Shown here piece by piece: positions 4,665 through 52,099 of a stretch of DNA of 64,000 nt. Every line of letters starts with the position of its first letter. The stretch's first letter is position 1. Where the stretch lies: assembly GCF_963921235.1 (NCBI RefSeq), contig NC_086108.1, positions 44,826,001 through 44,890,000 on the forward strand, read 5' to 3'. This DNA is from Mobula hypostoma (Eukaryota). The notes beneath the pieces were generated by a model. It saw only the letters and a list, made by a program, of their open reading frames with translations. It ran no database searches and was not told the DNA's origin. Position numbers and translations under genes: made by a program.

Positions 4665-16947
<12,283 letters not shown>

Positions 16948-26799: not shown

Positions 26800-29700
26800 A
26801 AACGGTTTAGCAGGTAGACGATGGCATCCTCAACTCCTAGTCGGAGCTGGTAGGCGAACTGGAGGGGATCTAAGTGTGGCCTGACCGTAGGCCGGAGCAG
26901 CTCCAGAACAAGTCTCTCCAAGGTCTTCAAGATGTGGGAGGTCAATGCCACCGGTCTGTAGTCATTGAGGCCGCTGGGGCGCGGCGTCTTTGGCACAGGG
27001 ACGAGGCAGGACATCTTCCACAGTACAGGAATCTTCTGGAGCCTCAGGCTCAGGTTGAATACATGGCGAAGTACTCCACATAGCTGAGGGGCACAGGCTT
27101 TGAGCACCCTGGTACTGACACCATTCGGTCCTGCAGCCTTGCTTGGGTTGAGACGTTTCAGCTGTCTTCTCACCTGTTCAGCTGTGAAGCCCACCATGGT
27201 GGTTTCGTTTGGGGAAGGGGTATAGTCATGAGAGCAGGGTGGGGGACTGTGAGGAGAGGTAGGAGGGGAGAGTGGAATATGTGTTGGTTGGGGGCCGACA
27301 ACAGATGACTCATAGAACCATACTCCAAGTGGGGTCTGACCAGGGTCCTATATAGGCTGCAACATTACCATAGAAACCATAACCATAGAAACTACAGCAC
27401 AGAAACAGGCCTTTTGGCCTTTCTTGGCTGTGCCAAACCATTTTCTGCCTAGTCCCACTGACCTGCACACGGACCATATCCCTCCATACACCTCCCATCC
27501 ATGTATCTGTCCAATTTATTCTTAAATGTTAAAAAAGAATCCACCTCGTCTGGCAGCTCATTCCATACTCCCACCACTCTCTGTGTGAAGAAGCCCCCCC
27601 TAATGTTCCCTTTAAACTTTTCCCCCCTCACCCTTAACCCATTTCCTCTGGTTTTTTTCTCCCCTTGCCTCAGTGGAAAAAGCCTGCTTGCATTCACTCT
27701 ATCAATACCCATCATAATTTTATATACCTCTATCAAATCTCCCCTCATTCTTCTACGCTCCAGGGAATAAAGTCCTAACCTATTCAACCTTTCTCTGTAA
27801 CTGAGTTTCTCAAGTCCCGGCAACATCCTTGTAAACCTTCTCTGCACTCTTTCAACCTTATTTGTATCCTTCCTGTAATTTGGTGACCAAAACTGAATAC
27901 AATACTCCAGATTCGGCCTCACCAATGCCTTATACAACCTCATCATAACATTCCAGCTCTTATACTCAATACTTTGATTAATAAAGGCCAATGTACCAAA
28001 AGCTCTCTTTACGACCCTATCTACCTGTGACGCCACTTTTAAGGAATTTTGTATCTGTATTCCCAGATCCCTCTGTTCCACTGCACTCCTCAGTGCCTTA
28101 CCATTAACCCTGTATGTTCTACCTTGGTTTGTCCTTCCAATGTGCAATACCTCACACTTGTCTGTATTAAACTCCATCTGCCATTTTTCAGCCCATTTTT
28201 CCAGCTGGTCCAAGTCCCTCTGCAGGCTCTGAAAACCTTCCTCACTGTGTACTACACCTCCAATCCTTGTATCATCAGCAAACTTGCTGATCCAATTTAC
28301 CACATTATCATCCAGATCATTGATATAGATGACAGATGACAATGGACCCAGCACTGATCCCTGTGGCACACCATTAGTCACAGGCCTCCACTCAGAGAAA
28401 CAATTCTCTACCACCACTCTCTGGCTTCTTCCATCGAGCCAATGTCTAATCCAATTTACCACCTCTCCATGTATACCTAGCCACTGAATTTTCCTAACTA
28501 ACCTCCCATGCGGGACCTTGTCAAAGGCCTTACTGAAGTCCATGTAGACAATATCCACTGCCTTCCCTTCACCCACTTTCCTGGTAACCTCCTCGAAAAA
28601 CTCCAGTAGATTGGTCAACATGACCTACCACGCACAAAGCCATGTTGACTCTCCCTAATAAGTCCCAGTCTATCCAAATGCTTGTAGATTCTGTCTCTTA
28701 GTACTCCCTCCAATAACTTACCTACTACCGATGTTAAACTTACTGGCCTATAATTTCCCAGATTACTTTTCGATCCTTTTTTAAACAACGGAACAACATG
28801 AGCCACTCTCCAATCCTCCAGCACCTCACCTGTAGACAGCGACATTTTAAATATTTCTGCCAGGGCCCCTGCAATTTCAACACTAGTCTCCCTCAAGGTC
28901 CGAGGGAACACCCTGTCAGGTCCCGGGGATTTATCCACTTTAATTTTCCTCAAGACAGCATGGACCTCCTCCTTTTCGATCTGTACAGTTTCCATGATCT
29001 CACTACTTGTTTCCCTTAATTCCATAGACTTCATGCCAGTTTCCTTAGTAAATACAGACGCAAAAAACCTATTTAAGATCTCCCCCATTTCCTTTGGTTC
29101 CACACATAGCTGACCACTCTGATCTTCAAGAGGACCAATTTTATCCCTTGCAATCCTTTTGCTCTTAATATACCTGTCAAAGCTCTTTGGATTATCCTTC
29201 ACTTTGACTGCCAAGGCAACCTCATGTCTTCTTTTAGCCCTCCTGATTTCTTTCTTAAGTATTTTCTTGCACTTCTTATACTCCTCAAGCACCTTATTTA
29301 CTCCCTGCTTCCTATATATGTCATACAACTCCCTCTTCTTCTTTATCAGAGTTGCAATATCCCTTGAGAACCAAGGTTCCTTATTCCTATTCACTTTGCC
29401 TTTAATCCTGACAGGAACATACAAATTCTGCACTCTCAAAATTTCTCCTTTGAAGGCTTCCCACCTACCGATCACATCCTTGCCAGAGAACAACCTGTCC
29501 CAATCCACGCTTTTTAGATCCTTTCTCATTTCTTCCAATTTGGCCCTCCAGTTAAGAACCTCAACCCTAGGACCAGATCTATCCTTGTCCATGATCAAGT
29601 TGAAACTAATGGTGTTATGATCACTGGAACCAAAGTGCTCCCCTACACAGACTTCTGTCACTTGTCCTAACTCGTTTCCTAACAGGAGATCCAATATGGC

Positions 29701-31362
29701 ATCCCCTCTAGTTGGTCCCTCTATATATTGATTTAGAAAACTTTCCTGAACACATTTTACAAACTCTAAACCATCTGGACCCCTAACAGTATGGGAGACC
29801 CAATCAATATATGGAAAATTAAAATCCCCTACCACCACAACTTTATGTTTCCTGCAGTTGCCTGCTATCTCTCTGCAGATTTGCTCTTCCAATTCTTGTT
29901 GACTATTGGGTGGTCTGTAATACAATCCCACTAATGTGGCCATACCTTTCCTGTTTCTCAGCTCCACCCATAAGGACTCAGTAGACAAGCCCTCTAATCT
30001 GTCCAGCCTGAGCACTGCTGTAATATTTTCCCTAACAAGCAATGCTACACCCCCACCCACCTTTCATTCCTCTGCCTCGATCACATCTGAAACATCGGAA
30101 CCCTGGAATATTAAGCTGCCAGTCCTGCCCCCCCCCCCCAGCCCCGTAGCCAAGTTTCACTATTGCTATAATGTCATAATTCCACGTGTCAATCCACGCC
30201 CTCAACTCATCCGCCTTCCCCGCAATACTCCTAGCATTGAAATATATACACCTCAGAAGATTTTTTACCACCACTCACAACCTTTCTGTTAGCGGATTTG
30301 ATTGAACTTTCAACATCATTTATTTTCACCTCAGCCACACTGTCAGCTCTGGCACTCCAGTTCCCATCCCCCTGCAAATCTAGTTTAAAGCCTCCCCAAT
30401 AGCACTAACAAACCTCCCTGAAAGGATATTGGTCCCCCTGTAGTTCAAGTGTAACCCGTCTCTCTTGTACAGGTCCCACCTGCCCCAGAAGAGGTCCCAA
30501 TTATCCTGAAATCTGAAACCCTGCCCCCTATACCAGTTCCTCAACCACTTGTTCATCCTCCAGAGCATCCTATTCCTACCCTCACTGGCATGTAGCACAG
30601 GTAGCAATCCTGAGATTACCACCCTTGAGGTCCTGCTTTTCAACTTCCTACCAAGCTCTCTATACTCACTCTCCAGGACCTCCTCACTCTTCCTTGCTAT
30701 GTCATTGGTACCGATGTGCACCACGACATCTGGCTGATCACCCTCCCACTTCAGAATGTCATGCAAGCGATCAGAGACATCCTTCACCCTGGCACCCGGG
30801 AGGCAACAAACCATCCTGGATTCTCTGTCACGCCCACAGAACCTCCTATATGCACCTCTAACTATCGAGTCCCCTATCACTACCGCTCTCCTCTTTTCCC
30901 CCCTCCCTTCTGCACTGCAGAGCCAGCCTCAGTGCCAGAGATCCGGCTACTGCAGCTTGTCCCAGGTAAGTCATCCCCCTCAACAGTATCCAATGCGGTA
31001 TACTTGTTGTTGAGGGGAATGGCCATAGGGGAACCCTGCTCAGCCTGCCCTTTCCTCTTCCCTCGCCTGACAGTGACCCAATTTCCTGTCCTCTGCTCCT
31101 TTGGCGTAACTACCTCCCTGTAGCTACTATCTATAATCTCCTCATTCTCCCGAATGATCATGTGGGGGATGGGCAGGGGCCACAATGTCAAATCTGTTAA
31201 GGAACAGGTTAAGTTCATTGGCCCTGTCCACACTGCCTTCAGCTCCTCTGTTGCTAGTTTGCCGGAACCCAGTAATGGTCCTCATCCCCCTCCAGACTTC
31301 TCTCATGTTGTTCTGCTGGAGTTTCCACTCAAGCTTCCTCCTGTACCTGTCTTTACCTCTGG
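26800..31362 (-). mobile_element. Rex1/Babar LINE fragment (pieces 26800-27313 and 31158-31362) split by a CR1
   Basis: KAAGPNGVSTRVLKACAPQL...NDYRPVALTS...LDPLQFAY; pieces rejoin at TCAT. Confidence 0.88.
27314..31157 (-). mobile_element. Young, near-intact CR1 LINE (partial ORF1 SGNH esterase plus ORF2 APE-RT)
   Basis: ORF1 IGDSIVRG/VHIGTND/DGLHLN (30380-30880); ORF2 in long open frames of 481 and 390 aa; TTTCTATGG tail. Confidence 0.95.
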
Positions 31363-31415: not shown

Positions 31416-32030
31416 CAGTGTTTCCCAACCTTTTTTTTTTATCCCACCACCCCCAAAGCACTTTCATACTTGCCAATGCTCCCCCAATGATTATGCTTTA
31501 AATTTTTATTTGTCTTTAAACCCAGATTGCATAGTACCTTTGTACTCTATAGCAGCTTCAATATTAATGTGATCCTTGAGCTTGATGGTTTTTAGCAAGA
31601 GTTGAATTATCTTATTCAAGTTGTGACTACCAATAAAAGCTGACATTTTTGAAAAGTATTTTTGCATCTTCATCATTCTGAATATTGATAATTACTTCTT
31701 GCAATCTCTCTTCCTGTTCTTCCACTTTGCAAAGAAATGGGCTGATTACCCAGTCCAAAATTTCCAGATCATTCAAATCCTTGGCTCGATTCTGAAAGTC
31801 CTTCAGGGACTGCAAGTGTAAGCAGTACTCTTGCAAATCACTGTCTGTGAAACAAAGTGTCATACTTCTCCTGCAGGGAAACAGGACATTCTTCTTCTAG
31901 TGTTTTGCTTATATATTTCCAATTTTCCGATAAGAGTGGACACTGCACTTTTTGCCTGGATTAAATTGAAATTCTCACCCTGCAGTTTCATATTTAGAAT
32001 GTTAATTTACCATGATAATCTAAACACCCA
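31416..32030 (-). mobile_element. hAT-Charlie/Buster transposon 3' fragment
   Basis: CAGTGTTTCCCAACC terminus; YCLHLQSL..DFQNR..DL...ILDWVISPF transposase remnant. Confidence 0.7.
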
Positions 32031-32098
32031 GAGAAAGTATTTTAAAGTCAGGATTGTAGTGCTTGGTACAACACAGAAAGAACCCGAAAGACCCTTAC

Positions 32099-32199
32099 CT
32101 CCTGGAGAGAGAGCATGGAAGACAGAATAGACGACAGCATTGTTTGCACTACACCATATCTGTCCTCTGCAAATGAGGCCGTTACAAGATGAGAAAGGG
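32099..32199 (-). CDS. NDC1: Isolated exon of nucleoporin NDC1 (TMEM48), C-terminal region; possibly a pseudo-exon
   Basis: T tract plus AG at 32201-32200; [34 protein letters not shown] matches the vertebrate NDC1 motif [21 protein letters not shown]...LQE; donor GAG|GTAAGG at 32098; 101 nt. No other NDC1 exon was recognised in the window. Confidence 0.85.
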
Positions 32200-33159
32200 C
32201 TGATTTAAAAAAAAGGACAAGTGAAATTAAATTGAAAAACATTAGATCGAACTTGATCAATCCTTATGGAATGACCTAGCAGAAAAAGTGTTCTATCTAG
32301 AATGTTGCAGGTCAATTAACATTGAAAGTTTGTCAAACTACAGAAATTCCTTGCAAGGATTGATGAATGAGGAAAATATTCTTGGTTTATTCTGGAACCT
32401 GGAGATTCACATTTATTAAACACTATTTAAATTACATCAGTAACATTTTGATCCCCAGAAATTTAGTCCTATTCATAGCTCCAGCATACTTTGCAGAATT
32501 GATGGTAAAGGCCAGTAGGGTAGCCCCTTGTTTATTTGAGATTTTAATCATCCAGTATGCCACTGATTGATTATAACAGTTGGGTGTAATCAATACAAGC
32601 AGATCAGCACAATATAAACACTCAGTGGCAAGCAATGGGGTATATTTAAACAGAAAATCTTGACTCTGTAGACACTTGTAAACTGAAGGGTGGTCAGGAA
32701 AAACAGCAAGTTTAAAATAAAACCAGTGTAATTTGGCTTCTTTTGATCTAATTGAACATATATAAAATAGTTAATGATTTTGATGAATTAGTGAGTAGAT
32801 ACCAAGCAGAATAGTTAGCTAGTAGTATAATTGCTTTATTTGCAAAGGATAATTGGGCCCAAACATGCCAAGAATATCATGTCAAATTGATAACAGATAT
32901 ACCCTTAAATTTTAGGCAGTTCAAGACTCCTGTGCAAATGAAGAACATCTTTGCTGGGGTTTTCTGAACTGCTCTTTAACACTGGGATGGGAATTTCCTT
33001 CAAAATTTTCCAACATTTACAATGGGGAATCTGCTGACTGAGATCTGGAATAGGCACAAATCATTTAATTTCAATAAAGAAGAGTTGCCAAGAAGGGCAA
33101 GGATAAGCTAAATTATATTTAATTTTTAATTGAGTTTGCTTAAAGTTTTTTCTTGTTTA

Positions 33160-33360
33160 GAGATACAGCACAGAACAGGCCTTTCCCGCCCAACAAGCTG
33201 CACCACCCTTCAACCAACCCATTTAACCCGAGCCAATTCACAGGACTATTTACAATGACCAACTAACCTATTAACTGGTACATCTTTGGAATGTGGGAAG
33301 AAACCAGAGCAACCATGTTCACAGAAAGGATATACAACGTCTCACAAAGGACGCCAAAAT
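33160..33360 (-). mobile_element. HE1-like SINE fragment
   Basis: AGATACAGCACAGAACAGGCCTT tail and TCTTTGGAATGTGGGAAGAAACCAGAGCA V-domain on the reverse strand. Confidence 0.6.
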
Positions 33361-34444
33361 GTTTCTTTAAAAAGATTTTAAAAATTAGACTTCAAATCAT
33401 AAATGATTCATTTATTTTTAAAAGTTGGGATATTTCTATACGTTAGGGACATTCAGCAATATATATTTCTAAACATTTAAAGTTACAACAGCTGTCAAAT
33501 CTTCAGGTTATGAATCAACCGGCTTTATATTTTCCCCATTTGTTGATGGAGCATGATATGACCTGACCAACACATGACAGCATGAAGTTGTACAATGCTC
33601 TGCCACACACAGGGTCCGGTCGTTTAGTTGCCTTGATGGACTTAGAAAATACACAGTTGTTGGAAGTAAACTATGGGTCATTGTTCAAGATCAAGATGAG
33701 AAACTGGTTATTTAGATTGAAAATATATGAAAGCCAAAGCATTCTTTGCCGGCTAAGGCATTAATTATAGTTCCCGAAGCTTCTTATCATCAAGTTTTAA
33801 TCCCCTTTCACTAAATTCCACATGCAACCTTATATAATTAATGCTCAAGAGATTGTACAGATTTTTAACATGAAAATATATACATGTTCTTTTGTTTCCT
33901 GTGGCAGTATTTATGCAGATTCAATGAGTGTGTTATTGCCCCTTTACCAGCACAATGACTTCAATATTTAACCAGCTACTTAGTCCACTTCTATGGGAGG
34001 GGATGAATAATAAATAATTGAATGGCAAGGCAGGAAATCAAATTCAAAAAGGGTTGTTTGGAGGCAGTATTTTAGTGGAGTTAAAACAGCTGATAGCCCA
34101 ATTCAGATGCAAGGTACAAAGGTTAAGAATTCAATGACATCAACAACAGACGTAGGCTCTGCAATCTCTTGAAGCTGGTCATGTTCCACAAATTCCTGGC
34201 TAATTTACCTCCAGTCAACCTCTCAACCTTTACCCACATCCTTTGATTTATGTCATCTCCACAAATCTATTGTTCTCATTTTGAATAGGTGTAACAGGGC
34301 ATCCAGCTGAGAATTGCAAGTGTCTGGGGGAAAAATTCTTGTCCACTATTCTAAATAGTTCTTATCCTTTCAGTTAAACTTTCCAGCCTGAGGGAACAAT
34401 TGTTTAGCATATCAAAATTGTGTGCAGTGATCCCTTAATTTTCA

Positions 34445-44930: not shown

Positions 44931-46396
44931 TTATTATCAACTAAGCAACTTGAAGCACATTTGCCTTTGCAGCTATCCAGTCATGATAAAGGGACCTTGA
45001 TCTGAAAGATTGACATTTACTTGACCTGCCGAGTAGCTTCAACATTTCCTGTTTCTGATTCTGGATTCCAGCATCTGCAGTTTTTTGCTCCAACTGCTAG
45101 TTACCATCAGGCTACTTGTAGTATGTAAGTCACTGTCTATAACCTGGTTCTAGTCATACAACAGTTACCCAACATTTGACCAATATCCAGTCAGCACTGT
45201 TGGAACATGATGCATGTTCACAATTGTTCAGGACAGTCTGGAAATATCAATAAGCCCCACACCCCTCCCCCTTCTGTATACTAACTAGCTTCACAACTTG
45301 AGAGATTACTCATTATTCAAACAAGGCTATATTGATTATTCATCCAGGATGCCTTACTCAGAGGCTTTTGAGTTTGGGTTTGGAATCACATTAAAGCAGA
45401 CTGCTGGATGGGGATTAAAGTTCTCCATGCCAAGTGATGAAAACGTTATTGAATTTTACAGTTTCCCACAGAAGAATGTAAGCAAGTGATTAGTATCACT
45501 CAACCCGACTCAGTAGTTTATGGTTATGAAATAAAGACTGCACTGAATGACACATCTTAGAAAAATTGAGCTGGAAATGAGAAATTCAGCTGTTATTGAT
45601 TTGCAGTTCCACGGAACACTGATTATGGTGTCACTATAACCTACTTTTACACTTGAGTATTCTATGTGTTGTAACTAATGCATCTTGATTAATGGCTGTA
45701 ATTTGAGCTGGGCATGTTAATGGCAAAGGAAAAGATGAGCTTAGTGTTATCTCAGTTGCAACTAAACAGGCTTCAGTACCTTTACTGCTCGATCTTCCAT
45801 GGACATCAACTGAACTCCAATCAATCAGGAGAAAAACAGGACAGATTCTGTCCACACAAACAAAGTGACTCACTCTACAGATTTTTTTTTAACGTCCTGG
45901 ACCAAACACGAACGGGAATAAGGTATGAAAATACTTAAAACTTTTTCACTTTTTTATACAATGATCATATTGCATGCAGAGCAGCAAGTTGCAAAACAGG
46001 ATTCTAGAAAATCAATTTGTCAAAATGTTACAGGTAAATAAAACATGAATGTAGATTTAAGAAGCATTTTACATATTTACCAATATCTGAATATTTTAAA
46101 ATCAGGAAATAATATGAATTTTGTAATTAGTAATTAACTATAGAACATGCCTTTGTATACTAGGACAGGGAAAAAGCATCCTTAATTTTAGTTGAGCATC
46201 TCCTGTTACAGTTAGGAAGTGCAGTTTTATGGATGGTGGGTACAAAGTGGATTTGTTTTGTTGACCTTGTAAAGATAGAACTAAAACGCAGAAAAGCTGG
46301 CAAGCCTGCATCCAACCTCCATCGAACCATAAACAAAGGAAAATATGCAGGTTCTGGAAATCCAAGAAATACACATTTAACACTCGCTTTGCCTAG

Positions 46397-47020
46397 TGAC
46401 ATGATTGCGGGGTGATAACCCCCTGCCTGGCCAAACCCTAGAACTCTCGTTTGGGTGGATGCTGTGCGATGTGTCCCCTGTTTCAAATCAGTACCCCGAA
46501 ATGACAAGCAGTACACAATATGCGATTAAACAATTAAGATTCTATAACTCTTATTTGGACTATGGGATTAATAGAGAACAAAATATAAAACAAAAGACGC
46601 CAAGAATTTATTTAATCAGTTTGTGCACAATTCGGCAATTCGTTGGAGCTCACGGTTTTCCTTTGCTGATCCTCCTTCGACCCCCGCAGGGTCCCGAGCC
46701 CTACCCACTAGGAGTCCGCTCTGTCAGCCAGCCTACAGCATCTCTTCATGCGCGTCTCCTCTCTTCATCTCCATCGCATCTTCTCCCCAAAGCCCGCGAA
46801 AACCAACAGCTTTCACACAAACAAGAAAGAATAACATTTCGCCCATTGGTTAGCAACTGAATTCCATAATCCCGTCATCTCTACCTATAACCCAAACATG
46901 CTGCTACAGAGAACCCATTACCTCAGCAGTTAACATTACAGAGAAGCCATTTTATTATAACACTACAGAGAAGTCATTTTATTAGCCTTAGCAGTTAACA
47001 TGAAAAGAGGAACCCTCACA
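46397..47020 (-). mobile_element. Probable solo LTR
   Basis: Minus strand starts TGTGAGGGTTCC, carries 3x TACAGAGAA(G/C)(C/T)CATT repeats, CpG-retaining body; TSD not confirmed. Confidence 0.5.
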
Positions 47021-47220
47021 CACACAAAATGCTGGAGTAACTCAGCAGGCCAAGCAGCATCTACAAAAAAAAGTACAGCCGACATTTCGGGCTGGGACCC
47101 TTTCTTTTTTCCTCCAGTCCAGCTGAAGGGTCTCAGCCTGAAATGTTGACTGTACTCTTTTCCATAGATGCTGCCTGGTCTGCTGAGTTCCTCCAGCATT
47201 TTGAGGGTGTTGTGTGTGTC
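47021..47220. mobile_element. Fold-back Penelope pLTR
   Basis: Inverted arms CAAAATGCTGGAG..ACTCAGCAG / CTGCTGAGTTCCTCCAGCATTTTG. Confidence 0.75.
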
Positions 47221-49471
47221 CATCAAGCCATGCCAGAATGTTGTATTTTTGGGCTGCAGAACAATGCTGAAGGTGCACAAAAGAGACAAATTGAGACCAG
47301 ATCAGATGGGATAAGGCAATCAGCGGGCGTTGAACATGCCTTTGCAGACGGGCTAATCTAGGCAAGTGCTTATGATAATAAAGATGTCAGATAGGATTTA
47401 GCTAGAAAGAATGTGGTTGATTCCTGAAATTAGCTATCACACATCTAGTGTTATTATCAATAACCCAATAGGGAACTCAGAGAAACATTTTTACCCAAAG
47501 GATTGTGATGTGGTGACTGCAAGTACAAGAAATAGAATCAAATAACAAATGCATTTTTGGGAAACTGAATGAAAGAGAAAGAACTAGAAGGAAATCCTGA
47601 TTATAGTTTTTAAGAAGTGGGGTGAGAGGCAGCTGATAAGCATCATAACGGATGGCAAAGACCAGTCGAGCAAATGGTGTACTCAACTTGACTCAATAAA
47701 TGCCTTTGAAAAATGATCACTTCATGGACCCAAAGCAATCTACATACGGTTGTGGGAGGGATATTTAAACATTAGAAGTAAAAACCTAAAATGTTCAATT
47801 AGGTACTTTAAGTAAAAGTTAACACTACCAATATAACCATAGGTGAGATAATTCCGATAAGAGGAAAGCTGTTTCTTTTTTATCTACACTGCAGATAATT
47901 GGGTCTCAGAAAGAAACCCTCAATATCAGAACTCTGGAACTAAGCATGTCACAGTTCTGGTTTATATCCATTACCAACTGACTAGAGAATAGGATCATAC
48001 AGCAAGCAATCTGCCCCCTTGGCCCAACTGGTCGTGCCACTGAATCAGAAAAACTTATTTTAATCGTAGTTTCACTGTAACAATGAGCAATTGCCTATTT
48101 TCTTGTGTTCAATACGAGGATCTAGAGTAGTTCTCTGCTGTCTTTAATAATAGTATAAATACAATACAGTACGAATAAGGAGGCTTGATTAATGCTATTG
48201 TATATGCACAAGCTCCATTATACTGTTGCAGTATACGGTAGATCCTCAGTGGAAAAACATTCACCTGAACCCAGATATCAACTGTAGCCTCTAAGCAACT
48301 AGTAGGAAATGAGTGGGAAGTTAAGAACTTCCTTCACCTACGCAGAACTGATTTTACACGATTTGAACTGAATAATTTAAAAGATGCTTATGGTACATCA
48401 GCTGATATACATTTCAAATAGGCTAAATAAAGAACGGTGAAATCGGAAGCAATACCAGCTGGAATGCTGCTACCATCAATTAGAATTCTATTATTTTTTA
48501 AAGCTGTGCCCAAGGTACACTTTTGAAGTCTCTTAAAAAATATTGGAAATATGACGTATCTCTCCCTGAAATTGTTACCACGTTAGACAAATCTCATTTC
48601 CATCAAAAAAGCCAGCTTTTCAATAAAGGCACAAAGCCTTTCTGAATAGAAAAAAAATGAAGGCTGCGATTTTTGGTTAACATGCAGATATAAGACTGGC
48701 CACTGGGCTTGGGAAACTACAGTACATGAGGAAGATTTGGCAGTTTTTTAATTCATAAAACTGTAGAAAGGCTAAGCAGAGGGAGAGACAAGCAATCCCG
48801 TAGTTTTAAAGTGATGGAAAAGGAATAATGTTCCCAGGAAGAAACACTTTAGAAAGTGTTGACATGAACACCATAGTTAGAACAAGATATGCCAAAGAGT
48901 GAAACAAATTGCTAGGTTATCAGTGATGTGTCGTTGATTGCAGGGGTGGGGGGTGGGGGGGAGGTGAAGAGAAATGGCCTCTTTCCATTTGTGTTATTTT
49001 AGGTTCAGCTATGATTGAAGGAATTATTTCAATGTATTAAAGCTATCATAATTTTCTATAAGTCGTTTGGTTAGTAACCAGATAGCATAAATTTTAGTCA
49101 CTTGAGAAGATGGAAGTCTTGTTTTCAACTATAGGGATGTTCTTGGGAAATGGATTCTGAATCAGAAGTCATGTTTGAAAGAAAAAACAATGTTTTGCAG
49201 TTTTTTAAAAAAAAAGTAGCTGTTTGCTAAAACAGGAGCAGAATGGGGAAAGGACACAGAACACATTCAAAAGCCAGGGTAGAGAAATAGATGAATCACT
49301 GAAAACTTATTTCTGATGAACAAGTGCTAGTTTTTAAAGAATAAATGCCTACAGAACAAGCTTGGCTCTGGTTAACTCACTGGAATAAAACTCACCACGA
49401 ATATATAATTATTCTGCAGAGAAGCATCTTTACCAAGCAACTACCAGAATAGAGCTGCAGAAACTAACAGG

Positions 49472-49528
49472 ATTGCCATAGTAACTGTTAAAAAAACTCA
49501 CGCTAGTTTGAAACGTCACTTATATATT
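49472..49528 (+). promoter_or_regulatory. Candidate RFX X-box / half-CRE / TATA-like promoter of the coiled-coil gene
   Basis: ATTGCCATAGTAAC (49472-49485), ACGTCA (49513-49518), TATATATT (49521-49528). Confidence 0.4.
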
Positions 49529-49905
49529 GTGGAGCCATTTGCCCCTTAGTTCTCATGTTAGAACTTTGATCCAACTTCCCTGCTTTCTACCAGCACCTTA
49601 CAAAGACTTTTTAAAAAGTCTTTACCCAATTCCTTGAAAGATTCCACACACTTTTAGAACAATGTAACAACAAAATAAAAATCTTCATCTCCCAGTTTAA
49701 GTCTCTCTAGCTATCACCCCTCCTGATATTGAAGACAATAACCAATCACTTATTAAAGGGCAGATATGTAGTATTGTGTAACAGCCATTGCACGTTTCAC
49801 TTCAAGTGCCACCAGGATTGCTTAAACTAGTAACACCATTAGGAAGGGTTGATGTGTAAAATGTGTGAAACCTGTTTGTGTGTTTGTCCCAGCCTCAGAT
49901 TAAAT

Positions 49906-50721
49906 ATGTCCAACCCAAAGGGGAAGATCTGGGACTCACCTGCACAGAGAAACACATTGACCAAGTATGAGACCAAGAAACTCTTACTGAAATACAGAAA
50001 AGAGCGAGATGAAGCATCAAAAAAAGGGGAAGTGAACCGAGATAAATTGCATGTGATTCAGACATCAATGGGAATGCAGATCCGAGAATTGAAGGAGAAG
50101 GTAAAGGTGCTGAACTCAGAGAACAAAGATTTACACAAAACCATTAAGAAACTGCAGCCAGAGTTACAACTGGATACCAACGCTAAACTGAGGAGCAAGC
50201 TGACCAAAGAGGTGCTAAAAGAACTGAAGGAGAGGGCTGAACGATGCAAGGACCTGCAGCAAGAAAACGCCAGGTTAAATCAGGAAATTGATCATCTGAC
50301 TTTGAAGTTGGCACAGACAGAGAATGTCAGGAAGGTTTTCGAAGACCAGCTCGTGGCTGCACAGAGTCAGGTGAGAAGTCTGAGCAACGAACATGACCGC
50401 ATGGTAAAACTATGGGAAGAAGCCAAAATACAGAGAGAAAAAATCCTGCAAATTAACCACCTCTTCAGACAGTCTCTCTTTAGTAAACAGCATTGTCGTC
50501 AGACAGTGGATAAATGCATTCAGACCATCGTCTCCATCCCCGTCTACAGGCGCTTTCACATGAGAAAACCCGAGGGGACGGTCAAGCAGCAGGTGGTTTA
50601 TCAGGAAAAGGAGAAGGTGAAGCAAAGGTTTATAAATGAGGCACCGGTGACCCCCAAAGAGAGAAGAGGCAACACTTCAAACAATGCATTGACTAAAATC
50701 TACAGAACTTCCCCAAACTGA
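49906..50721 (+). CDS. Uncharacterised intronless coiled-coil protein, 271 aa
   Basis: 816-nt open frame in non-repeat DNA, K/E/L/Q-rich heptad pattern, Kozak -3 A, acceptor-like TTTGTCCCAG ending 49890, TGTA-tg-AATAAA at 50757-50768. Confidence 0.75.
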   Translation: MSNPKGKIWDSPAQRNTLTKYETKKLLLKYRKERDEASKKGEVNRDKLHVIQTSMGMQIRELKEKVKVLNSENKDLHKTIKKLQPELQLDTNAKLRSKLTKEVLKELKERAERCKDLQQENARLNQEIDHLTLKLAQTENVRKVFEDQLVAAQSQVRSLSNEHDRMVKLWEEAKIQREKILQINHLFRQSLFSKQHCRQTVDKCIQTIVSIPVYRRFHMRKPEGTVKQQVVYQEKEKVKQRFINEAPVTPKERRGNTSNNALTKIYRTSPN

Positions 50722-52099
50722 GACCTATTCCATGTAATGCAAAGGGGAAAAAAATCTGTATGAATAAAGGCAGAGGAATTCCTCAAATCATCAGTACTCT
50801 TCATGGTTATGAGATGTATTTACATTTTCTGTGTGTGCAGCATTAAAAATTCACCATATCTCAGAAAAGCAACCAAGCTTTGTCTTGCAATAGGTAACAC
50901 CAAGGCTATGGGAAAATCACTTTGTTATCTCTTGTCTGTATATTTCAGTCTTTAACAAGAAAATAAATATCCTTTAAGTCAAGGCCAATTAAAATGTTTT
51001 ATTATTAAACTGATTAATGTTTTGTCTCCTCACCACTAAAGTGATGGTGTATATTTGTTAATGGTCTAATTAGAGTCCATGGGATGGTACAGGCAAGGCC
51101 TACCACCTTTCTACTGTCTCCAGGTGAACATGTGGTGCAATTCTTTATCTTGGGACCTCTTCATTAGCTGATGGGCAACAGGTGCCACATTCTAATAACG
51201 GCCTGATGATGAGCCACTTGCATAAATCTGCCCAATGCCCCACTTCGTAACTAAATAGAAAATATTCAGCAGATCTATGAACATAATACAATAGAGCAGG
51301 TTGCTTGGCACTCATTGCCAGGCCGAACAGATACCAGTGCAAGGCCGATCTTTCACCTTAGTGGCACTTTCCTATTCTTGAATGCGCATGGCAGCTGGCC
51401 TAACACAGGTTTTGTGGTAGAGAATTTTAAAGATTTACTACCCTATGGGTGAAGAACTTCTTTCTCATCTTTGTTATGAATAACCAATTACTTATTTTGA
51501 GATAATTTCCCCCTCTCTAGACACTTCCAGCCACCAGAAACAAACTCAAGAGAATTTTATTCAGTTCAGTGAGAATAGCTTTCCTTCCAAGATCAAGAGT
51601 GGACAGGCCAAATCTGATTAATTTCTCCCCATTCCCTCTTCATTGCTAGTATGTCCTTCCTTAGCTAGGGAGGCTAGACGAGAATGGTTCTAAAAAAATA
51701 CTGAAGTAAGTTATGCCCACTCATATATTTATACCTTTTGTGGCGACCTTTTGACTTCCCTCTCACATTGCCCTCCATTTCCCTTTCATCCATGTGTCTA
51801 AGAGTCTCTTAAATGTCCCTAATCATGTATTTGCCTCGACCATCACTCCTGGCAATGCATTCCACGCACTTATCACTGAGTAAGAATCATACCCCTGACA
51901 TCCACCGCCCCCCCCCCAATATTTTCCTCCAGTCACCTTAAAGTTATACCCTCTCATATTAATTATTGCTGCACTGGGAAAAAGGGTGTTGGCTGTCCAC
52001 TCTATCTATGCCTCATCATCTTAAACACTCAATCAAATCACCTCTCCTCCTCCCACACTCCAAAGAGAAAAGAGCTAGCTTGCTCAAGTTATCAAGTTA

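What the first reader, a model, noticed from the sequence alone, without database searches (positions are those of the whole stretch)
49472..50790. Unrecognised compact coiled-coil gene with a candidate RFX (cilia/sperm) promoter, downstream of YIPF1
Seen: an uninterrupted 271-codon frame in unique DNA with no TE motifs, a central ~170-aa heptad coiled coil and a basic, low-complexity tail. It has a Kozak -3 A, an acceptor 15 nt before the ATG, AATAAA 41 nt after the stop, and an X-box-like ATTGCCATAGTAAC plus half-CRE and TATA-like motif ~400 bp upstream. Known: RFX X-boxes mark ciliary/flagellar genes, and I recall no protein-coding gene in the human YIPF1-NDC1 interval. Inference: a ciliary or spermatid structural gene lost in mammals or restricted to this lineage. 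I cannot assign a family; the RKERDEASKK resemblance to shootin-1 is too short to call.
Basis: partly seen in the sequence, partly recalled or inferred. Interest (0 to 1): 0.75.

Follow-up and report, generated by a model that had tools for sequence, protein, structure and literature searches.

The report
Known uncharacterised coiled-coil gene (zgc:113691)
The open reading frame is a real, selected gene, but it is the ray copy of an already annotated, functionally unstudied coiled-coil gene family found from sharks to frogs and not in amniotes, and the proposed cilia-type (RFX) promoter does not hold up.

Summary
The 271-codon frame (ATG 49906, stop 50719-50721) is real, single-copy and under purifying selection (dN/dS 0.18-0.26 among five elasmobranchs). 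It is not unrecognised. The exact protein is already called on this assembly. It belongs to the family annotated as "uncharacterized protein zgc:113691", found in sharks, rays, chimaera, coelacanth, bichirs, sturgeon, more than 100 teleosts and all three amphibian orders. It always lies between YIPF1 and NDC1. No amniote, cyclostome or invertebrate protein matched, so loss in amniotes is plausible.

The protein has two long helices (residues 20-86 and 93-197), a canonical leucine zipper with an invariant Asn, and a disordered basic tail carrying an invariant Q-T-x-x-S motif. No Pfam, PDB or fold family fits beyond generic coiled-coil noise.

The acceptor just before the ATG is real, but it joins a conserved non-coding exon about 4 kb upstream (about 45540-45922). 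Such X-box-like matches occur at chance frequency and are not conserved.

Function remains unknown; a dimeric scaffold or adaptor is my inference. The case is ordinary and of low interest.

The parts
45540..45922 (+). Conserved block holding the putative promoter and non-coding exon 1. The TSS is not mapped. It includes a CCAAT box (about 45819-45825) and conserved stretches such as TTCTGTCCACACAAACAAAGTG.
   Evidence: Five-species alignment A4; blastn to the Amblyraja exon 1 of NCBI isoform X1. CpG-poor.
45923..49892 (+). Intron 1, from GT donor 45923-45924 to AG acceptor 49891-49892.
   Evidence: The donor AAG|GTATGA is invariant in Mobula, Pristis, Amblyraja, Leucoraja and Stegostoma. The acceptor TTTGTCCCAG| is conserved in the same five. 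The junction is used by the Amblyraja model P0004. Coordinates.
49472..49485 (+). It lies inside intron 1 and is probably not functional.
   Evidence: One mismatch to the consensus, at chance frequency. Pristis has ATTGCTGTAGTAAC and has lost the half-CRE. The region is not alignable in skates or shark.
49893..50990 (+). Exon 2: 13 nt of 5'UTR, the whole CDS and the 3'UTR. The 3' end is not mapped and may lie further downstream.
   Evidence: The Leucoraja isoform model uses an exon about 310 nt past the stop.
49906..50721 (+). CDS of 271 aa plus stop.
   Evidence: dN/dS 0.18-0.26.
50077..50169 (+). Leucine zipper, residues 58-88. Leu at 62, 69, 76 and 83; Asn73 is invariant among the elasmobranchs (A1) and near-invariant across the 32-member family alignment (A5).
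   Evidence: Alignments A1, A2 and A5. Sub-threshold bZIP_1 zipper match.
49963..50496 (+). Two long helices, residues 20-86 and 93-197, with a conserved hinge P85-E-L-x-L-[DE].
   Evidence: AlphaFold2 model, helix pLDDT above 90.
50371..50372 (+). Internal GT (CAG|GTGAGA) after Gln155. The equivalent site is used as an alternative donor in the NCBI Leucoraja isoform X1.
   Evidence: P0012 diverges after ...AAQSQ; sequence.
50509..50541 (+). Conserved tail motif D-K-x-[IV]-Q-T-x-x-S-I-P, residues 202-212. Q206, T207 and S210 are invariant in 32 family members.
50763..50768 (+). Proximal AATAAA.
   Evidence: Conserved in Pristis only; skates have AATAAT.
50962..50967 (+). Distal AATAAA, conserved in all four batoids compared.

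Best explanation
This is the ray orthologue of the jawed-vertebrate gene family that annotation pipelines call 'uncharacterized protein zgc:113691'.

Gene structure (inferred from conservation plus one NCBI gene model): two exons. A short non-coding first exon lies in a conserved, CpG-poor block at about 45.54-45.92 kb. A 3.97-kb intron follows. The second exon starts 13 nt before the ATG and holds the whole 271-aa CDS.

Protein: a basic (pI about 10) alpha-helical coiled coil. Shown by prediction and conservation are two long helices, a four-heptad leucine zipper with a conserved Asn at an 'a' position, and a disordered basic tail with an invariant Q-T-x-x-S motif.

Mechanism (inference only): the zipper drives a parallel homodimer, and the rod plus tail act as a scaffold or adaptor that docks a partner through the tail motif.

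The gene has kept its place between YIPF1 and NDC1 from sharks to frogs and has no detectable amniote counterpart.
For: - ORF and single copy.
- Orthologues: 52-98% identity across elasmobranchs. The profile search of 1.84 billion representatives finds only 12 clusters, and the 11 that could be named or aligned are jawed anamniotes. More than 100 teleosts and frogs, salamanders and caecilians are included.
- Synteny YIPF1-X-NDC1 in Pristis, Amblyraja, Heterodontus, Stegostoma, Callorhinchus, Leucoraja, Xenopus, Clupea and Ictalurus. YIPF1 exons are upstream in the window.
- Purifying selection: dN/dS 0.18-0.26, with 0.12-0.15 in the helical part and 0.37-0.50 in the tail.
- Exon 1, donor and acceptor conservation.
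- Structure. Zipper and tail motifs.
Against: - No transcript evidence for this species or any elasmobranch could be obtained.
- The TSS is not mapped. Exon 1 rests on one NCBI model (Amblyraja isoform X1) plus conservation, while the Mobula birostris model instead reads through the acceptor.
- The dimeric-scaffold mechanism is inferred from sequence features only.
- No partner, location or tissue is known.
- Absence from amniotes rests on protein databases, not on a search of amniote genomes.
Confidence: 0.8

Rival explanations
1. One reading: a ciliary or spermatid structural gene driven by an RFX X-box, half-CRE and TATA promoter about 400 bp upstream of the ATG.
For: The motif ATTGCCATAGTAAC is one mismatch from the X-box consensus, and a second one-mismatch match lies 43 bp upstream. 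The promoter region is CpG-poor, as in tissue-restricted genes. Loss in amniotes is compatible with many aquatic or external-fertilisation traits. Protein-language-model neighbours include SPATA24 and other cilium or centrosome coiled coils, but at noise level.
Against: The motifs lie in intron 1. Pristis has two mismatches and has lost the CRE half-site. The region cannot be aligned in skates or shark, while exon 1 can. Window-wide there are 19 such matches against 15.9 in shuffles. Upstream of nine orthologues there are 10 against about 11 expected, and none in either skate. No X-box is conserved in the exon 1 block.
Confidence: 0.06
2. A zipper-only bZIP-like protein that heterodimerises with bZIP transcription factors and modulates them, without binding DNA itself.
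For: bZIP_1 is the commonest sub-threshold Pfam hit (8 of 32 members, best E 7e-5). It covers exactly the zipper half of the model. The L-x6-L-x3-N-x2-L-x6-L pattern with a conserved Asn is that of GCN4 and Jun zippers (comparison from general knowledge). PDB profile hits are GCN4 zippers. The protein is basic.
Against: Scores are below the Pfam gathering threshold (18.7 against 27.6). At the spacing where the bZIP basic region would lie, N-x2-A-A-x2-[CS]-R is absent (own reading). A second 105-residue helix and the tail motif have no bZIP counterpart. Coiled-coil similarity is notoriously non-specific.
Confidence: 0.05
3. A microtubule plus-end or dynein-adaptor type coiled coil, using an EB-binding SxIP-like tail motif or a Spindly/HAP1/RILP-like adaptor rod.
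For: The tail motif reads T-S-I-P, which fits [ST]-x-[IL]-P, in a basic disordered context in coelacanth, sturgeon and all amphibians. Weak hits recur to dynein-adaptor families: HAP1_N in 6 of 32 members, RILP-like and CDR2 in the fold search, Spindly and CDR2L in the Atlas.
Against: In this ray and all elasmobranchs the motif is [AV]-S-I-P, and in teleosts S-I-[SN], so the SxIP signature is not the conserved part; Q, T and S are. All family and fold hits are sub-threshold: E above 0.5, TM below 0.4, fewer than 170 shared features. No A-A-x-x-G CC1 box is present at the conserved ERDEA site.
Confidence: 0.05
4. A chance ORF, a pseudogene, or a retrocopy/TE-derived frame.
For: The CDS has no introns. 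The chimaera copy carries two in-frame stops and the Stegostoma copy a frameshift, so the gene can decay in some lineages.
Against: dN/dS is about 0.2. The frame is full-length and intact in at least ten elasmobranchs and in hundreds of bony fish and amphibians. It has a fixed syntenic position in every jawed-vertebrate lineage checked, from sharks to frogs. It has a conserved 5'UTR intron, a single copy and no TE domains.
Confidence: 0.02

Closest known systems
Vertebrate 'uncharacterized protein zgc:113691' family (e.g. Pristis pectinata P0002, Latimeria H3ANW0, Xenopus tropicalis XENTR_v10012066, Ictalurus XP_017346705)
   Same: Full-length similarity (82% to Pristis, about 30-37% to bony fish and amphibians). 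Same length class (230-290 aa), single coding exon, and position between YIPF1 and NDC1. Same invariant motifs: ERD[ED]A, the ENK-L zipper, KLWEE and QTxxS.
   Different: Nothing essential; this is a member. Elasmobranch copies have [AV]-S-I-P-[IV]-Y-R-R-F in the tail where tetrapods have T-S-I-P and teleosts S-I-S. In cartilaginous fish NDC1 is convergent, whereas it is tandem in herring, catfish and frog.
bZIP leucine zippers (Pfam PF00170; GCN4, Jun, CREB)
   Same: Four Leu heptads with a buried Asn at an 'a' position. This points to a parallel dimer and gives weak HMM matches to the zipper half of the model.
   Different: No basic DNA-binding region, score below threshold, and a much longer second helix plus an unrelated tail. 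This is a resemblance in how it may dimerise, not membership.
Small vertebrate coiled-coil adaptors (Spindly, RILP-like, HAP1_N, SPATA24, CDR2)
   Same: All-helical rod proteins of similar size that appear as nearest neighbours by language-model features and Foldseek.
   Different: All matches are at noise level and the family-defining motifs are absent.

Membership tests
zgc:113691 family | Significant full-length sequence similarity to annotated members | tested here: met
   E 3e-135 to Pristis 'zgc:113691' with 100% coverage. The profile recovers coelacanth, bichir, teleost and amphibian members at E 1e-25 to 1e-51.
zgc:113691 family | Conserved position between YIPF1 and NDC1 | tested here: met
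   YIPF1 exons lie at 5872-6039 and 15428-15613 (+). The window end aligns to the Pristis sequence just 3' of NDC1. The neighbours are the same in nine other species.
zgc:113691 family | Single coding exon and the family's invariant motifs (E33 R34 A37; N73-K74-x-L76; Q206 T207 S210) | tested here: met
   CDS ranges in the loci equal protein length times 3.
RFX (X-box) regulated ciliary genes | X-box near the TSS, conserved in orthologues and more frequent than chance | tested here: not met
   The motif is intronic, about 3.5 kb from conserved exon 1. It is not conserved and occurs at chance frequency.
RFX (X-box) regulated ciliary genes | Expression in ciliated cells or testis | not testable with these tools
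No paper mentions the gene.
bZIP transcription factors (PF00170) | Pfam gathering score, and a basic region N-x2-A-A-x2-[CS]-R placed 18 residues before the first zipper Leu | tested here: not met
   18.7 bits against a cut-off of 27.6; the match covers model positions 27-57 only. At the expected position the sequence is N44-R-D-K-L-H-V-I-Q.
SxIP plus-end tracking proteins | [ST]-x-[IL]-P in a basic, Ser/Pro-rich disordered stretch | tested here: not met
   The window protein has V-S-I-P. The motif is met only in coelacanth, sturgeon and amphibian orthologues.
Processed retrogene | Intronless copy of a multi-exon parent, lineage-specific location, poly(A) remnant | tested here: not met
   A conserved 5'UTR intron, the same locus from sharks to frogs, and no parent family found among 1.84 billion representatives.

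The most novel reading that the evidence does not exclude
The family is a jawed-vertebrate invention that was lost at the origin of amniotes. It would encode a leucine-zipper adaptor with a specific, still unknown cell-biological role, for example in sperm, cilia or microtubule-end biology tied to aquatic reproduction or larval life. The conserved homeodomain/CCAAT-type exon 1 block, rather than an X-box, would be its control region.
Probability: 0.12. Interest if true: 0.5.

Novelty: already known. Interest (0 to 1): 0.22.

Why it matters
The value here is mostly in cleaning up the record. The finding is not a hidden gene: the same product is already called on this assembly and annotated in many genomes.

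What remains of some interest is that a small, well-conserved coiled-coil gene has no Pfam family, no paper in the library searched and no amniote counterpart. It has nevertheless held one chromosomal position from sharks to frogs. It is one of many "dark" vertebrate genes that could be studied cheaply in zebrafish or Xenopus.

The corrected gene model, with its first exon about 4 kb upstream, also shows why promoter motifs read just upstream of an ATG can mislead.

Tried and rejected
- Pfam on the protein and on 32 family members: only sub-threshold coiled-coil noise.
- PDB profile search: GCN4-type zippers only.
- AlphaFold2 model and Foldseek against Swiss-Prot models: no hit with E below 0.5 or TM above 0.4.
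- ESM Atlas: its own cluster plus noise-level coiled coils.
- Rfam on 44.5-52 kb: nothing near the gathering score, so the exon 1 block is not a known RNA gene.
- Literature: four searches for the gene name in different spellings found nothing in main texts.
- Catfish Logan contigs, which I hoped were transcripts, are collinear with the genome and end in simple repeats, so they are genomic.
- The shootin-1 resemblance was not tested; no shootin sequence was available from a tool. The KERDEA stretch is simply the family's most conserved motif.
- The human YIPF1-NDC1 interval was not examined; no tool covers it, and I sent no human sequence.

Full report
**1. Observation**

The window holds an uninterrupted frame from ATG 49906 to the stop at 50719-50721, 271 codons.
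- A at -3 of the start codon.
- A pyrimidine tract and AG at 49891-49892, 15 nt before the ATG.
- AATAAA at 50763.
- ATTGCCATAGTAAC at 49472-49485, followed by CGTCA and TATATAT.

The CDS occurs once in the window. An in-frame ATG at 49852 would add 18 residues and is used in the NCBI model of Mobula birostris (P0001, 289 aa). That extension is not conserved: in Pristis a stop codon (TAA) stands two codons after the corresponding ATG. The conserved start is therefore 49906.

**2. Identity**

The identical 271-aa product is already a called gene on assembly GCA_963921235.1. It is 98% identical to a Mobula birostris protein and 82% identical to Pristis pectinata 'uncharacterized protein zgc:113691'. 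Identity to skates and sharks is 52-71%.

A profile of these sequences, searched against 1.84 billion representative proteins, found only 12 clusters with E below 0.001. Ten were looked up by name or source: chimaera, coelacanth, axolotl, bichir/reedfish, sturgeon and teleosts, plus one unnamed Logan sequence that aligns with the teleost members. Of the other two, one is the Stegostoma protein and the other, another unnamed sequence, also aligns with the teleosts.

Word-seeded searches added more than 100 teleost species and frogs, salamanders and caecilians. No amniote, cyclostome or invertebrate protein appeared. Automatic names in the lists, such as paramyosin, interaptin-like, CENP-E and ATG11-like, are generic coiled-coil labels.

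**3. Genomic context**

In every locus whose gene calls listed a neighbour, that neighbour is YIPF1 and/or NDC1:
- Pristis, Amblyraja, Heterodontus, Leucoraja: NDC1 convergent, 4-6 kb downstream.
- Stegostoma: YIPF1 upstream.
- Callorhinchus: a 309-aa gene with no Pfam call, probably YIPF1, upstream and NDC1 downstream.
- Xenopus: NDC1 downstream, same strand.
- Herring and channel catfish: YIPF1-X-NDC1, all on one strand.

Mis-fused annotations with NDC1 or YIPF1 in Polypterus, Xenoophorus and Leptodactylus tell the same story. In the window, YIPF1 exons lie at 5872-6039 and 15428-15613 on the + strand. The last 5 kb of the window aligns to the Pristis sequence just 3' of NDC1. The gene is therefore an old, positionally stable orthologue, not a retrocopy or a TE product.

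**4. Selection**

Nei-Gojobori estimates on the codon alignment of Mobula, Pristis, Amblyraja, Leucoraja and Stegostoma give dN/dS of 0.18-0.26. dS ranges from 0.07 to 1.4. The helical part gives 0.12-0.15 and the tail 0.37-0.50.

Decay does occur in places. The Callorhinchus copy has two in-frame stops after residue 159. The Stegostoma assembly has a frameshift near the N-terminus.

**5. Gene structure and promoter**

The NCBI Amblyraja isoform X1 (P0004) starts in an exon 6.3 kb upstream.

The sequence around that exon is the best-conserved non-coding block of the locus. It aligns between Mobula (45520-45960), Pristis, both skates and the shark Stegostoma. The donor AAG|GTATGA, a CCAAT box and several 10-20-nt stretches are invariant. 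In the window the last exon base is 45922 and exon 2 starts at 49893. The acceptor TTTGT[CT]CCAG is also shared by all five elasmobranchs.

The upstream ATG of this exon is kept in four of the five species. It forms a short uORF in Pristis and Stegostoma and an N-terminal extension in skates. In the window it is ACC. The block is CpG-poor and matches no Rfam family.

The TSS itself is not mapped, and the Mobula birostris model does not use the intron. The two-exon model is therefore well supported but not proven.

**6. The RFX idea**

The X-box-like motif, half-CRE and TATA-like run lie about 3.5 kb inside intron 1.
- In Pristis the X-box has two mismatches and the CRE half-site is gone, although the surrounding intron is 83% identical.
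- In skates only the last 340 bp of the intron can be aligned, and the motif region cannot. In the shark nothing aligns there.
- One-mismatch matches to GTNRCC(N0-3)RGYAAC number 19 in the window against 15.9 in shuffles.
- Upstream of nine orthologues I count 10 sites where about 11 are expected, with none in either skate.
- No conserved X-box lies in the exon 1 block.

A ciliary or sperm role is simply untested.

**7. 3' end**

The AATAAA at 50763 is shared with Pristis, but skates read AATAAT. The AATAAA at 50962 is shared by all four batoids. A Leucoraja isoform model uses the internal CAG|GTGAGA donor (window 50371-50372) and an exon about 310 nt past the stop. Some transcripts therefore probably run further.

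**8. Protein**

AlphaFold2 with a 32-sequence alignment gives helices 20-86 and 93-197 at pLDDT above 90. The helices are separated by a conserved hinge, and the tail is disordered. Mean pLDDT is 75.8 and pTM 0.34.

Residues 58-88 form a leucine zipper with Leu at 62, 69, 76 and 83. Asn73 sits between two of the Leu positions, as in GCN4 and Jun zippers (the comparison is from general knowledge). This explains the sub-threshold bZIP_1 and GCN4 hits. There is no bZIP basic region.

The tail (pI 10.4) carries the only invariant residues outside the rod: Q206, T207 and S210, within D-K-x-[IV]-Q-T-x-x-S-I-P. In coelacanth, sturgeon and amphibians this reads T-S-I-P, the form of an EB1-binding SxIP motif. 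Elasmobranchs have [AV]-S-I-P and teleosts S-I-S, so I do not rely on that reading.

Foldseek and the Atlas give no credible family.

**9. Mechanism**

Shown: a conserved, selected, helical protein with a zipper and a motif-bearing disordered tail.

Inferred: a parallel homodimeric rod that serves as a scaffold or adaptor, with the tail motif as a docking or phosphorylation site.

Unknown: partner, compartment and tissue.

I put 0.8 on the identity and gene model taken together, and much less on any specific cellular role.

**10. Novelty and verdict**

The gene is already annotated, and the family already carries a placeholder name from a zebrafish cDNA clone. No paper in the library's main texts mentions it. 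It contradicts 'restricted to this lineage' and 'unrecognised'.

This is an ordinary, correctly spotted ORF with an over-read promoter.

**11. Limits**

- No amniote or human DNA was examined.

Noticed in passing
window 32004-34418, exon at 32099-32215 (-): An intact copy of the third-from-last NDC1 coding exon (82% aa identity to Pristis) with its flanking intron sequence. It lies between YIPF1 and this gene, although the true NDC1 3' end is expected just beyond 64000. It may be a segmental duplicate, a relic of the NDC1 inversion seen in cartilaginous fish, or a mis-join.
   Followed up: partly
L004 (Callorhinchus milii) 10001-10700: The chimaera orthologue has two in-frame stop codons after residue 159, followed by still-recognisable homologous sequence. 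It is either truncated or decaying.
   Followed up: partly
L003 (Stegostoma tigrinum) 13780-13880: A frameshift lies between the canonical start (MSSPRRETRGS…) and the rest of the ORF. The NCBI model patches it with an unrelated upstream exon. This is either an assembly error or a real lesion.
   Followed up: partly
window 45901-45922 and orthologous exon 1: An upstream ATG in exon 1 is conserved in Pristis, both skates and Stegostoma. It gives a uORF or, in skates, an in-frame 13-residue extension. It is replaced by ACC in this genome.
   Followed up: partly
window 45690-45710: A conserved TGATTAATGG element (homeodomain/PBX-HOX-like, judged from memory) and a CCAAT box at about 45819 lie within the exon 1 block. 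The forkhead/SOX-like ACAAACAAAG is invariant in five elasmobranchs.
   Followed up: no
window 27381-30060 (-): Two long ORFs (390 and 481 aa) have a homologous copy in the Pristis locus in the opposite orientation. This is probably a LINE or other retroelement.
   Followed up: no
window 46330-47216: A stretch absent from the Pristis alignment, richer in CpG. It contains a hairpin at 47050-47178 that gives sub-threshold miRNA-model hits and recurs elsewhere in the window. It is probably a short repeat insertion in intron 1.
   Followed up: no
L007, L009, L006 versus L001-L005: NDC1 is on the same strand as this gene in herring, catfish and Xenopus, but convergent in all cartilaginous fish examined. 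This implies an inversion of NDC1 in one of the two lineages.
   Followed up: no
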